NCBI RefSeq assembly: GCF_964188315.1
Contig: NC_135656.1
Location: forward strand, 109,492,001-109,556,000
Origin: Podarcis muralis
Lineage: Eukaryota
Reading direction: 5' to 3'
DNA length: 64,000 bases
Shown: positions 4,520 to 12,194 of the stretch, one piece after another
How positions within the stretch are numbered: the stretch's first letter is position 1
How the letters are laid out: each line of letters starts with the position of its first letter
Notes under the pieces: model-generated
Database searches by the model: none
Told to the model about the DNA's origin: nothing
Seen by the model: the letters and a program-made list of their open reading frames with translations, nothing else
Made by a program: the position numbers and the translations under genes

Positions 4520-5448
4520 TATAGCTAGGACGGGCAGCTTTCTGGAAAGCAGGGAAGACAAAATGTATAATTCCCTCTCACTGCCCTCCCTCCTGAAACC
4601 TTCCCATATAGTGCAGCGAGGCTAGGGATGGTTTTTATTTTGTTTTTGTTTTAAAGTCATGGTGTGCATCTCCCAGCCTTAACCCCCATTCCCTCAGGGA
4701 TGCTGTGAATGATTGTGGACTCAAACTGCTAAATCTCCTGTCCCCATGTGATTTCCCATCCCTATCCATCCTCCACCTGCAATATTCCTCAGGACCTGGA
4801 AGCCAGTAGTCAAAGGTCCTTGTCCAGTATCAAAGGGAGTCTTGTCACAATCCTCCGGTGACCTTTTTGGAGAGGAAAACAACCCTGGTTAAAGGCTGCA
4901 CCTCTAGAACATCTTGCCATTTGAAGAAGCAGGCAAGTAGAATGCTGAGTGTCCTCTGGGCAGTCCCCTTTTTGCACACACACAGCTGTATACGTCCCAT
5001 TCACCAAGCAACCAACCCTAATTTAATACACTATAAAGACTGCGGTTTCTGTGTGACGTTTCTATTCCTCATCTGCCTTCTGCTTACCACTTTTCCGAGC
5101 TGTCGCCCTCCCCCTCGGTTTATGCTTCAAGGCCATAATTCTCTGAAATGGTGCAAGTTAAGTTTCTATTCTCTTCCTAGCTGCCCAGCCTAAATGTATT
5201 GTGCAGCAGGTACCTGACCCTGCTAGACCACATCCTTTGCTGATCGTGTTATCTCAAGTGGTCTCATCACACCAGAGCTGCTTGCTTCTCTCATTTTCCA
5301 GAGACCAGATCTTTCACTTACCACGTAGAAGAAAAAATGAGAGACACAATTTTGAAACATTCAATTAAGGAACCAGTTCAGTTGCTGGAGGTTTGAGACG
5401 GGTATGATTTCAGAATTGGTGCGGTATCTAATTGTACGACCCTCCAGG

Positions 5449-8400
5449 ATGTTGATCAGTGTGGCATTCTTCTGGGCATTCTCAGGTGAGTAAAAGCAAA
5501 AGCAGATTGTGCTTTGGAAGTCGGTTCTTTGGGGACAACGCTGGGCAGAAGAGCCGGCAAGATGGGCGGTTATTGCTATAAGCGTTCTACAAATGGGATA
5601 GTGAGGCTGCTGGGGTGAGCTTCTGAAGGGCAGGAGAACCAAACGAATGGCAGTGAGTTTAGACACTTTGTTCTCCTTTAGAAAACCCAAAGCAGATCAC
5701 CCCACACCCTGGGTGGAATTCAACATCGCGAATTATATCAAATCTTCCATCTGCACAAGCAATTCAGCTTGCCAAACAGAATGATCCCTTCCCCCCTGTG
5801 TGCTGTTCTGAGCAGGGGCGTCCCTAGGAGTTAGATAGGTTGGTGGCTGCCAAGGGCGCAGGCCCAGGAAGGGCGCAAAAATAGCCCTCAGTTTAGAAAG
5901 TCATTGGCGGAGCACGAAAGGCAACAAAAAGGAAACTCTTTGAGTTTCTGGTCCATGGTCTCTCTCAGCTTTGGAGGCACCTATATATCTCCATGCCAAA
6001 TAAGCAAGGGGGCCCAGTTATGTCTCTGGTTCTGGGAGTTCTCTTGACCCATCCTAGGCCAAATTTGTGGGATGGACGAGGGGAGGAAGGGAGAAATCTC
6101 TCTTGCATGGGTTGAAGACCTTTCGCAGGGCTTCTGATGACAAGTTTCATTAGATGAATCCTCCCCGCGGAATCAACACATGGACCAAAATACACCTACT
6201 CTTGAAGTTTTATACTTTTCTGAATTTTGAGTTGGCGTGCCACATAAAAAGACTGCAAAATGCATATATTAGTGTGCAAAAATGTTTATAATGGGCAGCC
6301 ATGCATAAAGACATGTATATAGGCTCTGACAGTGTGGTGTAGTGGTTAAGAGCGGTAGTCTCGTAATCTGGGGAACCGGGTTCGCGTCTCCGCTCCTCCA
6401 CATGCAGCTGCTGGGTGACCTTGGGCCAGTCACACTTCTCTGAAGTCTCTCAGCCCCACTCACCTCACAGAGTGTTTGTTGTGGGGGAGGAAGGGAAAGG
6501 AGAATGTTAGCTGCTTTGAGACTCCTGAAGGGGATAGATAAAGTGGGANNNNNNNNNNNNNNNNNNNNNNNNNNNNNNNNNNNNNNNNNNNNNNNNNNNN
6601 NNNNNNNNNNNNNNNNNNNNNNNNNNNNNNNNNNNNNNNNNNNNNNNNNNNNNNNNNNNNNNNNNNNNNNNNNNNNNNNNNNNNNNNNNNNNNNNNNNNT
6701 TAATGCCCCTCACATGGTGAGAAATGTCAGGGATGAACACTTTCCCTGTGGGTGGCTTTCTATGCGATTACATAGGGCCTTCTGGGTAGTGGCGCCCTCA
6801 CTGTGGAGCACCTTCCCATCAAATGTCAAGGAAATAAACAACTATCTGACTTCTAGAAGACATCTGAAGGCAGCCCTGTTTAGGGACGTTTTTTAATGTT
6901 GGATGTTTCAGCGTGTTTTTAATACTCTGTTGGGAGCCGTCCAGAGTGGATGGGGAAACCCAGCCAGATGGGCAGGGTATAAATAAGACATTATTTAGCA
7001 CTGATGTGGATGCTGTCTCAGTGGCACAGCCAGTGTCATAGGATTTTTTGCATACCCTCCCATACATCTTCCTCTCTTTCTCAGTCTCAGACTCTCTGCC
7101 TTTCTCCAAAATGCTGTTTCTTCACAAAAGCACTAGATTATCTTATCAGCTACTGGGCAGGGCCCCCTTCTCTGACAGGCTTTTTCTGTACAGATGTTCC
7201 AAGAAAAACATGATGATGGCCACCAACAGGGGTGACTTTTGAAAGGGATTAGATAAATACGTCGAGGATAAGGCTTTCAATGGGTATTAGCCACAAATAC
7301 CATTTATGTATGGGACGCAGGTGGCGCTGTGGGTTAAACCACAGAGCCTAGGGGTTGCGGATCAGAAGGTCAGTGGTTCGAATCCCTGCGATGGGGTGAG
7401 CTCCCATTGCTCGGTCCCAGCTCCTGCCAACCTAGCAGTTCGAAAGCATTTCAAAGTGGAAGTAGATAAATAGGTACCACTCCGGCGGGAAGGTAAATGG
7501 CATTTCTGTGCGCTGCTCTGGTTCGACAGAAGTGGCTTAGTCATGCTGGCCACATGACCCAGAAGCTGTACGCTGGCTCCCTCAGCCAGTAAAGTGAGAT
7601 GAGCACCGCAACCCCAGAGTCGGCCACAACTGGACCTAATGGTCAGGGGTCCCTTTACCTTTACCTTACCATTTATGTATAGCAGACAACACATGCATTT
7701 TCCTTCTCTGTTTCTTCCAGGCATGGCATCAGCAGTGCCCATCTCCTCAGCTCACAGTTGGGTCAACGCTACCATCAACCAGACTGTTCAGTTACCCTTC
7801 TCCCTTCAGCCCCCCAGTCCTTCCTGGGAATTCCTCCACATCACATGGACTTTTATTGCCGGCAACAGAAATGTCCTTATCCTTGCATACATTGTAGACA
7901 ATTGCAGTGGAACAGCCCTCAAATGGTGGGGGAAAGAATGTAATACTAACAAACTGGTGGATGAGATGTATCAGCAGCGGGCAGACGTTCTCAAGAATGG
8001 CACGCTAGTGCTTCATCGCGTGGGGCTTCACGATGCGGGAATGTACCGCGCGACAATTAAATCCTTGGATTTAAGACTGCATGCGACAGTGAATCTCACC
8101 GTGACTGAAGGTAATGGACAGCAATGAGCATAAATAAATATTTAGGGTGCTTCATGCTTGGAATGATTGCCTGCTGTCCTGATGTGATCTCCAGGGCTTC
8201 AATCCTATGCATTTTTAACTCCACTAAATTCAGTGAGGCATAAGGTATGACTGAGAATGCCACTGTTTCAGTTCTATTCGCATAGAACTGAAACAAGTCT
8301 CCCTTCACAAAATCTATTTTGGTGGTTGTCCAACAATTATAACCTGAGGTCCAGCATCTGGTACAGCCAGTTCCTAGATGCTGAGACGCCCTGATCTAGG

Positions 8401-11400
8401 GGGTGGGGGAGCAATCTAGCAGCTTTATTCTTCTTCCTCTTCCTCTTCCTCTTCTTCTTCCTCTTCTTCCTCCTCCTCCTCCTCCTCCTCCTCCTCCTCC
8501 TCCTCCTCCTTTATTGAATTTATATACTGCCCTATACCCAGGGGGTCTAAGGGCCGTTCACAGAATAAAATCAGGATAGAAAACCACAAAATACCTAATA
8601 GAAATAAAAACAACAACCCAACAGCCCCCACTTATTGTTCTTATGTCATTCTCTTTGCAAGAAAGCTACAAACCCCACAACATCCTCGCCACACATTTTC
8701 TTTTCCTTTCTGCTTTTTATTTAGTTTTTCAGATTTTAAAAATTTACAAACAATTATCAAACAATCAGCACAGAAAGATAATTCCGAAGAATCTCCTGAA
8801 CTTTCCTCCTCCCCTTTGTGGGTCCTTATATTAACTTTTTCCTCCTGCATCTTATGTATTAATCCAAATCTTTTAAATCTCCATTATACCCCAAATTCAA
8901 CATTAAACTACAGTTGTTATTCCAATCCTACTAATAATTTTTATTGTTTACAATGGTTCTAAGGCAGATTATATATTTCCCCCATTCTTTGTTAAAAATT
9001 TCATCTTCCTGATTTCTTATTCTTCTGGTCACTTTTGCCAATTCGGCATGGTCCATCAACCTAACCTGCCATTCTTCTCTGGTAGGGACTCTGTCTTCTT
9101 TTCATCTCTGAGCCCCAGTTTGTTTGTACTGGTCACCATATCACTTTCTCCTTAAAAACAAAACGTAGGGCAGCTGGCTGCACTGTACAACACAGCTGGC
9201 AAGACCCCATTCAACCATCTTAATTTCCCAGAAGCTTATATTTATATGAAACTTAACATATAGGAAATGTTATTCATCAAGTTGTAGAAGTGTAGAGTTA
9301 CAAGGGACCCCAAGGGGGATGTCATCACAGGCCATCAGGCAGGAGAGGAACCAACCCCCATGGCAGGTTGCCAGTAATGGATAAGATAAGATAAGGAAAA
9401 GTCCTAACCACCTGCTATTTATTCAATATTTACAGAGAGAGGGTTGGGAACACAGCCTCTTGGAATAATGGTGTTGCCCCCAAGTAAATCTCTCCTCCCC
9501 CTTTTCATTCGTCATCTCTTCTATGGGTAGTGCTGAGCACCCTTTGCTTCTGAGCCCTTTGCTCTCCCACTTTTAAGGCCCACTGGGTTCTGGGAGATGG
9601 TGGGTCTGGAATGCTTTCTAGTGATAACGTGTCAGCCAGTTGTTCCGGCTCTGCCTCTTCCTCCTCTCCCATTATTTCTCAGCTTTCCCCCTCATCTACC
9701 TCTGAGCTGTGACCTCCCTCAAACCCCTGTGTAATTCTGAACTGTCTTCTTCTTCTCTGGAAGGGTCAGGATGGGGAGGTGGTCTCCACCATTCCTCCTC
9801 TGCCCAGTCCCTGACATGGGCTTCTGCCATGAACCCTGTAAATATTTAGCAATACCTCTGGTCCGAAGCCAGAAAAATGGCAGATCATCCCAACTACAGA
9901 TGAGTAAAACAAGTCAGCTTCACACACCATGTCTTGATGTTGGCTTGTTTTTAAGGAAGACGTGATATGTTTCTTGTTTTTCACCTTTTCTGATTCAATA
10001 TCCCTTTTCTTTCACCTCCACATCTGCCGTAGGAGCAGAGTCATTAACCCAGGAAAAACTCTGATGCAAACGTAAAGGTATACTTGTGAACCCTCATTGA
10101 TATCCTGACACTGTACAGCGGAACCTTAGTTCTCGATTGTCTCCATTGATGAACAATTTGGAACCTGAACGCCGAAAACCCCAAAGTAATTGCTTCCATT
10201 TTTTAACTCACCTCAGAAGTCAAATGGCTTCCAAGGCGTGTTTCTCCATTTTTTTCAATGGATTTTGCTGACCGCCCATTGATCCTCAGTCTCTGAACGT
10301 TTCGGAAATTGAATGGTCTTCCGGTACGGAATATGTTCGAAAACCGAGGTTCCACTGTATAATCCTTCTGACTCACCTATAATGATACGATAATCTTTAT
10401 TGTCATTGGCCCATACAGAACAACGAAATTGAAAAAATCTACACCAGACATTCAAAAACCAACAAGCCTGCTACCCCAGCTACCCTGCCTGCTCTAACTT
10501 ATGGATAAATCTCCTCTGTTGAATGGCACACTGCGAAGTTCCCTTGTGTAATCCTTTTTTTTTCTTTTTTCTGATGTTGTTGATTTCTTTTTGTTTGACC
10601 TTGTGGTGTTTAGTGTCACTGGCTTTTGCCGCAATAAAACTTGAACTTGAACTTGATATTTGTTTTAAACCAATCACATTAACAGTATTTTTCTTTCTTT
10701 TATTCTGCTTTATCTTCTTTATGTAATTAAATAAAAATTACTGGATGGCTTTCGGCTCAGTCTTACTCAGAACAGACCCCCCTGAAGAAGGCTTAACTGA
10801 ATAACACCCATATTTTTTTTTTTAAAAAAACAAAAACTAGAGCTGGTTGGAGTCACATTCCAGCCAAGCTAAAGCACCCAAGGTATTTTAAGGAAGACGT
10901 GATATGTTTCTTGTTTTTCACCTTTTCTGATTCAATATCCCTTTCCCCCCCACCACATTTACTGCAGGAGCAAGATCATTAACCCAGGAAAAACTCAGCA
11001 CTGAGAATATGGTTCGGATGATTTGGGGTGGCCTCCTCCTCTGCTTCCTTGGGCTCTTGGTGGTAGATGTAAGTGCTGCATTTCTTTTAAAAAAAAATTG
11101 CTTGGAAAAAGAGCAAAGGGAAATGTTAAGTGTCTTCCTCAGAATAGACCCCCTGAAGAAGGCTTAAATGAATAACACCCATTTATTAATTTTTTTAAAA
11201 AACCCAAATACAGAAGTTGGTTGGAGTCACATTCCAACCAAGCTAAAGCCCCCAAGGAGGGAACAGGGCAAGAGCCAGAGAGAGGCGTGGCCTGTGGAAG
11301 TTCTAGGAAAGGTCAAGGGACCCCTGACCATTAGGTCCAGTCGTGGCCGACTCTGGGGTTGCGGCGTCATCTCGCTTTATTGGCCGAGGGAGCCGGCGTA

Positions 11401-12194
11401 CAGCTTCCGGGACATGTGTCCAGCATGACCAAGCTGCTTGTGGCGAACCAGAGCAGCGCACGGAAACGCCGTTTACCTTCCCGCTGGAGCGGTACCTATT
11501 TATCTACTTGCACTTTGACGTGCTTTCGAACTGCTAGGTTGGCAGGAGCAGGGACCGAGCAACGAGAACTCCACCCGTTACAGGGATTTGAACCGCCGAC
11601 CTTCTGATCAGCAAGTCCTAGGCTCTATGGCTCAACCCACAGCACCACCCACATCCCTAGTGTAAGTTCTAGAGGTCAAGAAAGAGAATTCTGGACTGCC
11701 ACGTTCTGCCCATATGTCAGAGGTTCCTCAAATGTTCCAAGCCAAGTGGCAAGGGGGAACCTGATTTCTATGTTGTCCTAGCAAACCGTTGCTGCAAAAT
11801 AATCATTATGGGAACAGGGATCTTTACTGAAGCCTCCACAGCTTGAGGGCCAAACTCCACTCTTTTTCTCCTAGCATTTTTGCACAGTGGATGGAAGCAT
11901 CACTCAGGGAAGGAAGACTGTGGGCCATCCTGGGAAATCCACTATTGACTGGAGCTGATATGTCATGAATGAGCCATCTGCTCATTTCATGAATCAAGGA
12001 GAGCAACAGGACACCTATCAAAAATTGGGAACTGTTGTCTACCCCATCTACCCCCATTGCAGGGCTGCAATTTTCAGCCACTCAAGTATCATGATCTGGA
12101 AGTAACCGAATATCTTGAATTGCAACAGGCATACAAATATGACTTCAACCAGCACCGTGAAGCCCTTAAGTTCAGGCAGCAGAAAGAGAACTAG
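5449..12194 (+). CDS. Putative single-IgV type I membrane receptor (CEACAM/CD2-SLAM-like V domain, LRC-type TM); model join(5449..5485,7721..8110,10968..11068,12063..12194), 219 aa
   Basis: Leader MLISVAFFWAFS-G ends at CAG|GTGAGT (phase 1). The 390-nt phase 1-1 exon encodes an IgV (TVQLPF, HITWTF, YQQRADVLKNGTLVLHRVGLHDAGMYRATI). TM exon (G)ARSLTQEKLSTENMVRMIWGGLLLCFLGLLVVD is phase 1-0 and ends GAT|GTAAGT. Tail exon GCNFQPLKYHDLEVTEYLELQQAY...KEN* follows a pyrimidine-rich CAG (phase 0). Lengths sum to 660 nt with no internal stop. The tail exon is the least certain part. Confidence 0.6.
6549..6699. other. Assembly gap (151 N)
   Basis: Run of N. Confidence 1.
7312..7666 (+). mobile_element. 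Sauria SINE about 55 bp upstream of the IgV exon
   Basis: 14-bp TSD TACCATTTATGTAT. Confidence 0.9.
7721..8110 (+). CDS. IgV-like domain exon lacking the canonical B-F disulfide
   Basis: Acceptor tttcttccag| and donor GAAG|gtaatg, symmetric phase 1. W in the C strand; DxGxYxA replaces DxGxYxC; two Cys lie in the C'-C'' region. Five N-X-S/T sequons. Lies inside ORF 7639..8127. Confidence 0.85.
8426..8510. repeat. (CTT/CTC)n microsatellite; other microsatellites at about 30836 (TG), 32123, 38905, 51092, 56185 (ATT), 56353 and 58013 (TA)
   Basis: Direct inspection. Confidence 0.95.
11309..11657 (-). mobile_element. Sauria SINE
   Basis: Reverse complement of the same consensus. Confidence 0.88.

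What the first reader, a model, noticed from the sequence alone, without database searches (positions are those of the whole stretch)
9951..11068. Duplicated post-Ig exon with a stop codon: candidate secreted-versus-membrane switch
Seen: 9951-10046 and 10887-10996 are paralogous (same intron end, then GAGCA.A.TCATTAACCCAGGAAAAACTC). The upstream copy (acceptor at 10032) reads (G)AESLTQEKL then TGA at 10062-10064; the downstream copy continues into the TM. AATAAA hexamers at 10633 and about 10730 lie between them. A second block is also duplicated (about 10770-10880 and 11138-11256). Inferred: use of the first exon with proximal polyadenylation gives a soluble IgV decoy and skipping it gives the membrane receptor, reminiscent of secreted/membrane Ig.
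Basis: partly seen in the sequence, partly recalled or inferred. Interest (0 to 1): 0.7.

Follow-up and report, generated by a model that had tools for sequence, protein, structure and literature searches.

The report
Disabled duplicate mini-exon in lizard receptor
A wall-lizard immune-type receptor gene carries an old partial copy of its membrane-anchor exon that became a 45-base mini-exon; it is open in the sand lizard, closed by one recent stop codon here, and nothing shows it works as a secreted-versus-membrane switch.

Summary
Blocks 9949-10061 and 10886-10996 are paralogous (88%), as are 10760-10883 and 11132-11257 (87%).

The reading needs changing. The gene is Podarcis muralis LOC114590948, an uncharacterised single-IgV receptor from a reptile-wide family. 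The repeat is an old tandem duplication of the TM exon and its flanks. Lacerta agilis and Zootoca vivipara share the same junction.

The upstream copy lost its TM-coding part at a CTCAG microhomology. Intron sequence fused to it supplies a GT donor. The result is a 45-nt, frame-preserving cassette exon (10033-10077), not a terminal exon.

In L. agilis the stop position reads AGA (Arg), and the RefSeq model includes the exon as a stalk insert. The P. muralis TGA is a derived A-to-T change. Zootoca has lost the exon. AATAAA 10633 lies in a Podarcis-only insert.

Three raw RNA runs show no reads on any exon of the gene. One contig set covers the IgV and TM exons but not this one.

Most likely this is a disabled stalk exon that is skipped, or gives an NMD-prone transcript when included. 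A working soluble isoform is not excluded. Interest is low to moderate.

The parts
5404..5485 (+). Exon 1 (signal peptide; RefSeq model starts at ATG 5404, second ATG at 5449), donor CAG|GTGAGT
   Evidence: tblastn of P0001 on the window; sequence read
7721..8110 (+). IgV exon (130 aa, ends in phase 1); lacks the canonical B/F-strand Cys pair
   Evidence: 100% identical to P. muralis LOC114590948
9949..10032 (+). Block A, intron part: copy of the last 82-84 nt of the intron before the TM exon (branch-point region, pyrimidine tract, AG)
10033..10077 (+). 45-nt phase 1-1 cassette (pseudo)exon. The first ~29-31 nt come from the TM exon 5' end and the rest from intron block X. TGA at 10062-10064 (derived A->T; AGA in L. 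agilis). Donor AAAG|GTATAC
10078..10382 (+). Block X, intron sequence whose second copy X' lies downstream of the TM exon in L. agilis and Zootoca. It contains a TA-flanked 242-nt MITE (10116-10357) that predates the duplication
10383..10654 (+). Two P. muralis-specific insertions (~10383-10489 and ~10504-10654) around a short shared stretch. The first belongs to a repeat expressed elsewhere. The second holds AATAAA 10633-10638
   Evidence: three-species alignment; reads here all carry fixed differences
10655..10885 (+). It ends at the duplication junction CCCAAGG-TA-TTTTAAGG, which Zootoca shares and L. agilis nearly so (CCCAAGC)
10886..10967 (+). Block A', the true intron end before the TM exon
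10968..11068 (+). TM exon (101 nt, phase 1 to 0): GARSLTQEKLSTENMVRMIWGGLLLCFLGLLVVD, with the family's conserved Arg. Donor GAT|GTAAGT
   Evidence: X1 contig lies on 10994-11069
11132..11257 (+). Block B' (the Y' remnant). In P. muralis X' has been deleted between 11127 and 11132
11875..11958 (+). Next exon in the RefSeq model (HFCTVDGS...DWS, stop at 11956-58). An alternative in-frame ORF lies at 12063-12194

Best explanation
The upstream copy is the relic of an old tandem duplication. The duplicated unit was: intron end A, TM exon, intron start, X (with a MITE), Y. The duplication arose before Podarcis, Lacerta and Zootoca diverged. In copy 1 a deletion or template switch at a CTCAG microhomology removed the TM-coding ~72 nt and the 5' splice site. 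This joined the first ~30 nt of the exon to intron block X, which happens to carry a GT 16 nt further on. The product is a 45-nt frame-preserving mini-exon between the IgV and TM exons. In L. agilis it is open and is annotated as a 15-residue stalk insert. In the P. muralis lineage one A->T change turned its Arg codon AGA into TGA. In P. muralis the membrane receptor therefore requires skipping this exon. If the exon is still spliced in, the mRNA carries a premature stop 114 nt or more before the last exon junction. By the 50-55-nt rule such an mRNA should be degraded by NMD. It is a disabled or leaky cassette exon, not a conserved secreted/membrane switch driven by proximal polyadenylation. 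Shown: the duplication, its age, the junctions, the derived state of the TGA and the splice-site sequences. Inferred: skipping or NMD, and the absence of a function.
For: Paralogy and unit structure. The junction Y|A' is shared, and X' copies (with the same MITE) lie downstream of the TM exon in Zootoca and L. agilis. The A|X junction and the 45-nt exon are shared with L. agilis. There the codon is AGA and the RefSeq protein P0003 reads ...GAESLTQEKLRCKHK|GAGSLTQKKLSIENMVRM.... Both X' copies have A at the position of window 10062. The P. muralis RefSeq protein P0001 skips the exon. No truncated isoform turned up among proteins of 72-381 aa. Identity of the exon between P. muralis and L. agilis is 42/45 (93.3%), no better than the intron background of 91.6%. 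AATAAA 10633 lies in a P. muralis-only insert. In X1 the contigs cover the IgV exon, the TM exon and 11934-12327 but give zero depth in 9964-10160. No junction, 3' end or pile-up appears at 10033-10760 in any of the four runs.
Against: The exon's splice signals look usable. The acceptor has 15/20 pyrimidines, like the TM exon's, and no upstream AG within 40 nt. The donor's U1 pairing energy is -5.7 kcal/mol, against -6.6 and -6.5 for the gene's real donors. Inclusion could therefore be substantial. The RNA evidence is weak. The gene has zero reads in the three raw RNA runs. X1 is only guessed to be RNA, its depth is 1-13, and it shows neither the 8110^10968 nor the 8110^10033 junction. The L. 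agilis model is a computational prediction with an odd non-AG acceptor 24 nt upstream. The 59-nt identical tract over the branch-point region of both copies could reflect constraint rather than gene conversion. TM-less isoforms are predicted for relatives such as alligator P0111 versus P0022.
Confidence: 0.6

Rival explanations
1. The 10033 exon is used as an alternative terminal exon: the donor is ignored and cleavage occurs at AATAAA 10633 or 10730. This gives a soluble IgV decoy, skipping gives the membrane receptor, and the choice is regulated like secreted/membrane immunoglobulin.
For: An intact acceptor, an in-frame stop and two AATAAA hexamers 570-670 nt downstream. TM-less predicted isoforms occur in relatives. 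One X1 contig of depth 8.5 lies over 10617-10624 with the window's own letters.
Against: The exon has a competent donor 13 nt after the stop, and the orthologous donor is used in the L. agilis model. The TGA is a lineage-specific change. AATAAA 10633 lies in a P. muralis-only insert, and 10730 lies in AT-rich intron that is also present where no stop exists. X1 has zero depth over 9964-10160, so there is no continuous 600-nt terminal exon, and no molecule ends pile up there. No such isoform is annotated.
Confidence: 0.08
2. The exon is a working PTC cassette. It is spliced in between the IgV and TM exons in a regulated fraction of transcripts. It then either lowers receptor output through NMD (a poison exon) or yields a truncated secreted IgV protein from transcripts that escape NMD.
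For: Splice sites are comparable to the gene's constitutive ones. The orthologous exon is included in the L. agilis model. The branch-point region is kept identical in both copies. The stop lies more than 55 nt upstream of the last junction (read from the sequence).
Against: The exon is no more conserved than intron background. The stop is young and absent in relatives, and Zootoca deleted the exon with no loss of the gene. No RNA support was found. RefSeq annotates only the skipped form.
Confidence: 0.2
3. The TGA is a polymorphism, or a private or erroneous base of this assembly. In most P. muralis alleles the exon would then still be an open stalk-coding cassette, as in L. agilis.
For: It is a single-base difference from the ancestral AGA. 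X1 contigs of the IgV exon differ from the window at about 2.6% of sites and show two haplotypes, so the locus is highly polymorphic.
Against: The RefSeq P. muralis model avoids the exon. No data in hand cover position 10062 in another individual (one search has no depth there).
Confidence: 0.1

Closest known systems
Orthologous cassette exon of Lacerta agilis LOC117042379 (protein P0003; L002:17498-17542)
   Same: Same A|X junction, same TGTAG-type acceptor, same AAAG|GTATAC donor, same 45-nt phase 1-1 length and 42/45 identical bases. It lies between the IgV-derived exons and the TM exon.
   Different: It is open (AGA Arg where P. muralis has TGA) and is included in the annotated mRNA as a stalk insert. 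The model begins it 24 nt further upstream at a non-AG site.
Tandem exon duplication giving alternative exons (reviews PMC9013439, PMC9741552)
   Same: An exon and its flanks were duplicated in tandem inside a gene. Both copies keep an acceptor and branch-point region. Patches of the copies have been homogenised.
   Different: Classical cases keep two full-length homologous exons that are used in a mutually exclusive way and are ancient and conserved. Here the copy is a 5' stump fused to intron sequence. It is additive rather than substitutive, restricted to one lineage, and now carries a stop.
Secreted versus membrane immunoglobulin heavy chain (mu-s/mu-m): competition between a proximal poly(A) site and splicing to the membrane exons (textbook knowledge)
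   Same: An Ig-domain protein whose TM segment is encoded by a separate downstream exon. A stop upstream of that exon would give a soluble form.
   Different: There is no evidence here of a used proximal poly(A) site. The stop lies in a separate mini-exon with its own donor. The arrangement is not conserved even among lacertid genera.
Poison (PTC-containing) cassette exons coupled to NMD, as in SR-protein genes (textbook knowledge)
   Same: A short cassette exon with an in-frame stop more than 55 nt upstream of the last exon junction. Its inclusion would be unproductive.
   Different: Known regulatory poison exons are highly conserved and demonstrably included. This one evolves at the intron rate, its stop is recent, and inclusion has not been seen.
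Soluble splice isoforms of IgSF immune receptors (for example CTLA-4 and PD-1 forms lacking the TM exon, and CEACAM1 soluble forms; from general knowledge, not tested here)
   Same: A single-IgV receptor that could lose its TM anchor through alternative exon use.
   Different: Those isoforms arise by skipping the TM exon and are documented at the RNA and protein level. Here the route would be inclusion of a stop-bearing exon and is undocumented.

Membership tests
Tandem (partial) exon duplication | Adjacent paralogous copies of an exon together with its flanking intron | tested here: met
   A/A' 88.5% and B/B' 86.6%, each with E 5e-36; the unit is 372 nt in copy 2
Tandem (partial) exon duplication | A real genomic feature, inherited rather than an assembly artefact | tested here: met
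   The Y|A' junction and the X/X' copies are present in the independent assemblies of L. agilis and Zootoca
Mutually exclusive duplicated exons | Two full-length homologous exons of equal phase that substitute for each other | tested here: not met
   Copy 1 keeps only ~30 nt of the 101-nt exon and lacks the TM-coding part. In the L. agilis model both are included together
Secreted/membrane switch by alternative polyadenylation (Ig mu type) | A used poly(A) site between the stop-bearing exon and the TM exon | tested here: inconclusive
   The hexamers exist, but no read ends or coverage were found. The gene is silent in the three raw RNA runs. AATAAA 10633 is in a species-specific insert
Secreted/membrane switch by alternative polyadenylation (Ig mu type) | The arrangement (stop plus signal) is conserved in relatives | tested here: not met
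   AGA instead of TGA in L. agilis; the exon is deleted in Zootoca
Poison cassette exon (AS-NMD) | Cassette exon with splice sites and an in-frame stop more than 50-55 nt upstream of the last exon junction | tested here: met
   Acceptor and donor are present and of ordinary crude strength. The TGA lies 13 + 101 nt upstream of the TM-exon junction
Poison cassette exon (AS-NMD) | Observed inclusion in RNA | tested here: inconclusive
   No coverage of 9964-10160 in X1 and no junctions in any run, but depth is very low or zero
Poison cassette exon (AS-NMD) | Elevated sequence conservation of the exon and its flanks | tested here: not met
   93.3% for the exon against 91.6% for the intron background between P. 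muralis and L. agilis
Immunoglobulin V-set domain receptor | Match to the V-set/Ig profile | tested here: inconclusive
   Pfam V-set scores 17.8 bits, below the 26-bit cut-off. A family profile hits the E-F strand region of many Ig domains in the PDB, down to E 3e-13, and the CEACAM1 N domain at E 5e-10. The canonical Cys pair is absent; C89 and C101 are invariant instead
Adaptor-paired activating receptors (basic residue in the TM, short tail) | Conserved Arg or Lys in the TM segment | tested here: met
   Arg is present in all 11 aligned family members that have a TM exon, from squamates, turtles and alligator
Adaptor-paired activating receptors (basic residue in the TM, short tail) | Physical association with an acidic-TM adaptor (DAP12 or FcR-gamma type) | not testable with these tools
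   Requires co-immunoprecipitation or a signalling assay

The most novel reading that the evidence does not exclude
In the Podarcis lineage a single A->T change in a stalk mini-exon, itself born from a partial duplicate of the TM exon, has converted one splice form of a membrane IgV receptor into a secreted decoy. This would be the birth of a soluble receptor isoform caught at an early, still lineage-specific stage. L. agilis would show the pre-mutation state and Zootoca the loss state.
Probability: 0.12. Interest if true: 0.5.

Novelty: new member of a known kind. Interest (0 to 1): 0.25.

Why it matters
If the ordinary reading holds, this is a clear small example of how partial exon duplication plus a deletion can turn intron sequence into a new frame-preserving mini-exon. 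It also shows how quickly such an exon can be kept, disabled or deleted in sister genera. That is useful for annotation, since the 10033 exon should not be taken as coding in P. muralis, and as a teaching case. It is not surprising. If the exon is included and the truncated product is secreted, it would show a soluble decoy arising from a membrane receptor by one point mutation. The receptor belongs to an uncharacterised reptile-wide IgV family with a conserved TM arginine. That family, more than the duplicate, may deserve study.

Tried and rejected
1. RNA test of the 8110^10033 junction. The first read laying try failed on the server side. The second showed zero depth on every exon of the gene in the two bulk runs and the one single-cell raw RNA run. 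Only short low-depth contigs appeared in X1, so no junction of either kind could be counted.

2. Search for an annotated soluble isoform. Two word-index protein searches were run with the IgV exon and with P0001, covering 72-381 aa. They found only the three lacertid models and no truncated form.

3. P0001 and Anolis P0015 are not on record in the contig collection. I therefore could not get another P. muralis copy, nor test whether the Anolis stalk repeats (TQEK...K.K|G) are homologous to the cassette.

4. Rfam gave no match in 7000-13500. No paper mentions the three LOC identifiers.

5. Rejected ideas. Assembly artefact: the arrangement is shared by three assemblies. The 698-nt middle of copy 1 as a simple new TE insertion: most of it (X, Y) is old intron sequence with a second copy downstream of the TM exon in relatives, and only ~260 nt are Podarcis-specific. 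The TGA as a product of the deletion junction: the junction codon is AGA in L. agilis.

6. I did not search or fold a joined spliced model. The N run at 6549-6699 was left alone, and the stretch laid with reads was chosen to avoid it.

Full report
WHAT IS THERE. The window region holds a + strand gene that matches Podarcis muralis LOC114590948 (protein P0001, 218 aa) at 100% identity.
- Exon 1, the signal peptide, lies at 5404/5449-5485.
- The IgV exon lies at 7721-8110 and ends in phase 1.
- The TM exon lies at 10968-11068 (101 nt).
- The RefSeq model continues with an exon at 11875-11958.

Pfam sees only a sub-threshold V-set match. The domain lacks the canonical Cys pair.

THE OBSERVATION.
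- 9949-10061 and 10886-10996 are 88.5% identical.
- 10760-10883 and 11132-11257 are 86.6% identical.
- Each match has E 5e-36, and there is no further copy in the window.
- The acceptor at 10032|10033, the reading (G)AESLTQEKL, the TGA at 10062-64, and AATAAA at 10633 and 10730 are all as described.

The upstream copy can therefore be a 45-nt exon (10033-10077). It enters and leaves in phase 1, so it preserves the reading frame.

ORIGIN, FROM TWO RELATIVES. I fetched the orthologous loci of Zootoca vivipara (L001) and Lacerta agilis (L002) and compared them with the window.

Call the pieces as follows:
- A: the intron end before the TM exon.
- E5 and E3: the first ~30 nt and the remainder of the TM exon.
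- i: the start of the next intron.
- X: an intron block holding a TA-flanked 242-nt MITE (window 10116-10357).

The arrangements in the three species are:
- P. muralis: A-E5-X-Y | A'-E5'-E3'-i'-Y'.
- L. agilis: A-E5-X-Y | A'-E5'-E3'-i'-(1 kb)-X'.
- Zootoca: (part of X)-Y | A'-E5'-E3'-i'-(1.4 kb)-X'-Y'.

The junction Y|A' (CCCAAGG-TA-TTTTAAGG) is shared across the three species. X and X' both contain the MITE. One tandem duplication of A-E5-E3-i-X-Y therefore predates the three genera.

Several later losses followed.
- E3 and i were lost from copy 1. Podarcis and Lacerta share this loss.
- Most of copy 1's 5' part was lost in Zootoca.
- X' was lost in Podarcis, and Y' in Lacerta.

The E5|X junction lies at a CTCAG shared by the exon (…AAACTCAG|CACTG) and by X' (…CTCAG|ATGCAAA). 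This indicates a microhomology-mediated deletion or template switch.

The copies differ by 12-13%. P. muralis and L. agilis introns differ by 8.4%. This fits a duplication older than that species split.

Two patches point to gene conversion between the copies rather than clean divergence.
- A 59-nt tract is identical in both P. muralis copies.
- About 30 nt up to and including the acceptor AG are identical in both L. agilis copies.

THE STOP CODON IS YOUNG. In L. agilis copy 1 the codon at window 10062-64 is AGA (Arg), and the 45-nt exon is open. Both X' copies also have A at that position. The T in P. muralis is therefore a derived A->T change.

The L. agilis RefSeq protein P0003 contains the exon. 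It reads ...GAESLTQEKLRCKHK, followed by the TM exon GAGSLTQKKLSIENMVRM.... The exon thus acts there, at least in the annotation, as a 15-residue stalk insert spliced through the AAAG|GTATAC donor. One caveat applies: that model starts the exon 24 nt upstream at a non-AG site, so it may rest on protein alignment rather than RNA.

Zootoca has no such exon. The P. muralis model P0001 skips it. Two protein searches covering 72-381 aa found no truncated isoform.

THE POLY(A) SIGNALS. In both relatives, window ~10383-10489 and ~10504-10654 are absent. AATAAA 10633 lies in the second of these Podarcis-only inserts. The first insert collects RNA reads that all differ from the window at the same three sites, so it belongs to a repeat expressed elsewhere. 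AATAAA 10730 lies in AT-rich block Y. It is also present in the relatives, where no stop precedes it.

RNA.
- One run search gave no indexed RNA holder.
- I laid X1 (contigs, kind guessed), one single-cell run and two bulk RNA runs on 7600-13500 (one search had failed).
- The three raw RNA runs have zero depth on all exons of the gene. Their reads lie only on SINEs and other repeats.
- X1 shows an RNA-like pattern. Short contigs lie on the IgV exon (7828-8095), the TM exon (10994-11069) and 11934-12327, with none on unique intron sequence.
- X1 has zero depth in 9964-10160, which contains the 45-nt exon.
- Depth is only 1-13, and neither the skipping junction nor the inclusion junction was assembled. 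This excludes only a dominant, continuous terminal exon.

SPLICE COMPETENCE (crude measures).
- The acceptor has 15/20 pyrimidines and no AG within 40 nt, the same as the TM exon's acceptor.
- Donor pairing to the U1 5' end is -5.7 kcal/mol, against -6.6 for the IgV exon and -6.5 for the TM exon.

Nothing in the sequence forbids use. This is the main reason my confidence is not higher.

CONSTRAINT. The exon is 42/45 identical between P. muralis and L. agilis (93.3%). The intron background is 91.6% and the TM exon 89.1%. There is no sign of selection on the mini-exon.

MECHANISM I COMMIT TO (0.6). In P. muralis the exon is a disabled stalk cassette, and the membrane receptor is made by skipping it. 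If it is included, the stop lies 13 nt before its own 3' junction and 114 nt before the TM-exon junction. By the established 50-55-nt rule such an mRNA is an NMD substrate rather than a good template for a soluble protein.

Rivals:
- A functional PTC cassette, acting as a poison exon or soluble form: 0.2.
- The stop is polymorphic or private to this assembly: 0.1.

COMPARISON WITH KNOWN THINGS. This is a case of tandem exon duplication (background: PMC9013439, PMC9741552, found). It does not belong to the mutually exclusive class, because the copy is a stump and is additive. It resembles the immunoglobulin mu-s/mu-m switch only in outcome. The defining features of that switch, a used proximal poly(A) site and conservation, were not met or could not be shown. 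It meets the formal layout of a poison exon but not its conservation. Inclusion remains unobserved.

THE GENE FAMILY.
- A full HMMER scan with the IgV exon found 102 representative proteins at E 0.001 or better and 29 at E 1e-10 or better.
- The ten looked up by name come from squamates, turtles and alligator. All are uncharacterised.
- The 11 aligned members that have a TM exon all share an Arg in the TM segment.
- Tails are very short.
- Residues C89 and C101 are invariant.
- The family profile hits the E-F strand region of many Ig domains in the PDB. Among V-type N-terminal domains it matches CEACAM1 (E 5e-10).

This looks like an adaptor-paired activating receptor. That is an inference from the TM arginine alone.

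VERDICT. A polyadenylation-driven secreted/membrane switch is not supported. Novelty: a new member of a known kind. Interest: 0.25.

Noticed in passing
window 7312-7662 and 11308-11657: Two SINE copies in opposite orientation (86-96% complementary) bracket the IgV exon, the mini-exon and the TM exon. Both have target-site duplications and are absent at the orthologous sites of L. agilis and Zootoca. An inverted pair like this could pair in the pre-mRNA and affect splicing or back-splicing.
   Followed up: partly
L002:14200-15237 and L001:14424-16053: L. agilis and Zootoca carry an extra degenerate copy of exon 1 plus an IgV exon with its middle deleted. Both RefSeq models use it as a mini-exon (GMTS...NQTE). 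P. muralis lacks it. The stalk region of this gene is being rebuilt by small duplications and deletions in each genus.
   Followed up: partly
window 11875-12194; L001:19218-19552; L002:19791-20157: The whole tail region is 92-95% conserved among the three lacertids. The RefSeq tail (HFCTV...) resembles the Anolis EHVCNL tail. An ORF at 12063-12194 (GCNFQPLKYHDLEVTEYLEL...) is in frame with the P. muralis TM exon, carries ITIM/ITSM-like tyrosines, and is where X1 depth lies. The Zootoca TM exon is 5 nt shorter, so its model reads the next exon in another frame. Which tail is real remains open.
   Followed up: partly
proteins P0001-P0033: This is an uncharacterised reptile-wide family: signal peptide, disulfide-less IgV with invariant C89/C101, short stalk, TM with a nearly invariant Arg, and a very short tail. 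Alligator LOC112548437 has a predicted TM-less isoform (P0111) beside a TM isoform (P0022).
   Followed up: partly
L002:17472-17498: The L. agilis RefSeq model begins the cassette exon 24 nt upstream of the TGTAG|GA acceptor, at a TT dinucleotide. It translates the pyrimidine tract as VSTSTSTV. Anolis P0015 has two ~24-residue stalk repeats ending TQEKDSIKGK|G that resemble this exon. The model may have been shaped by protein alignment.
   Followed up: no
window 9570-9830 and 10383-10489: RNA reads pile up here in all runs, but every read carries the same differences from the window. At 9727-9790 there is also a 30-letter replacement. These are copies of repeats transcribed elsewhere, not transcription of this intron.
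   Followed up: partly
window 10617-10624: One X1 contig of depth 8.5 matches the window's own letters inside the Podarcis-specific insert that holds AATAAA 10633. The single-cell reads there carry two differences. Its origin is unknown.
   Followed up: no
window 15130 onward: A V2R-type vomeronasal receptor gene starts about 3 kb downstream of the IgV receptor gene. In Zootoca a C-type lectin gene lies upstream on the opposite strand.
   Followed up: no
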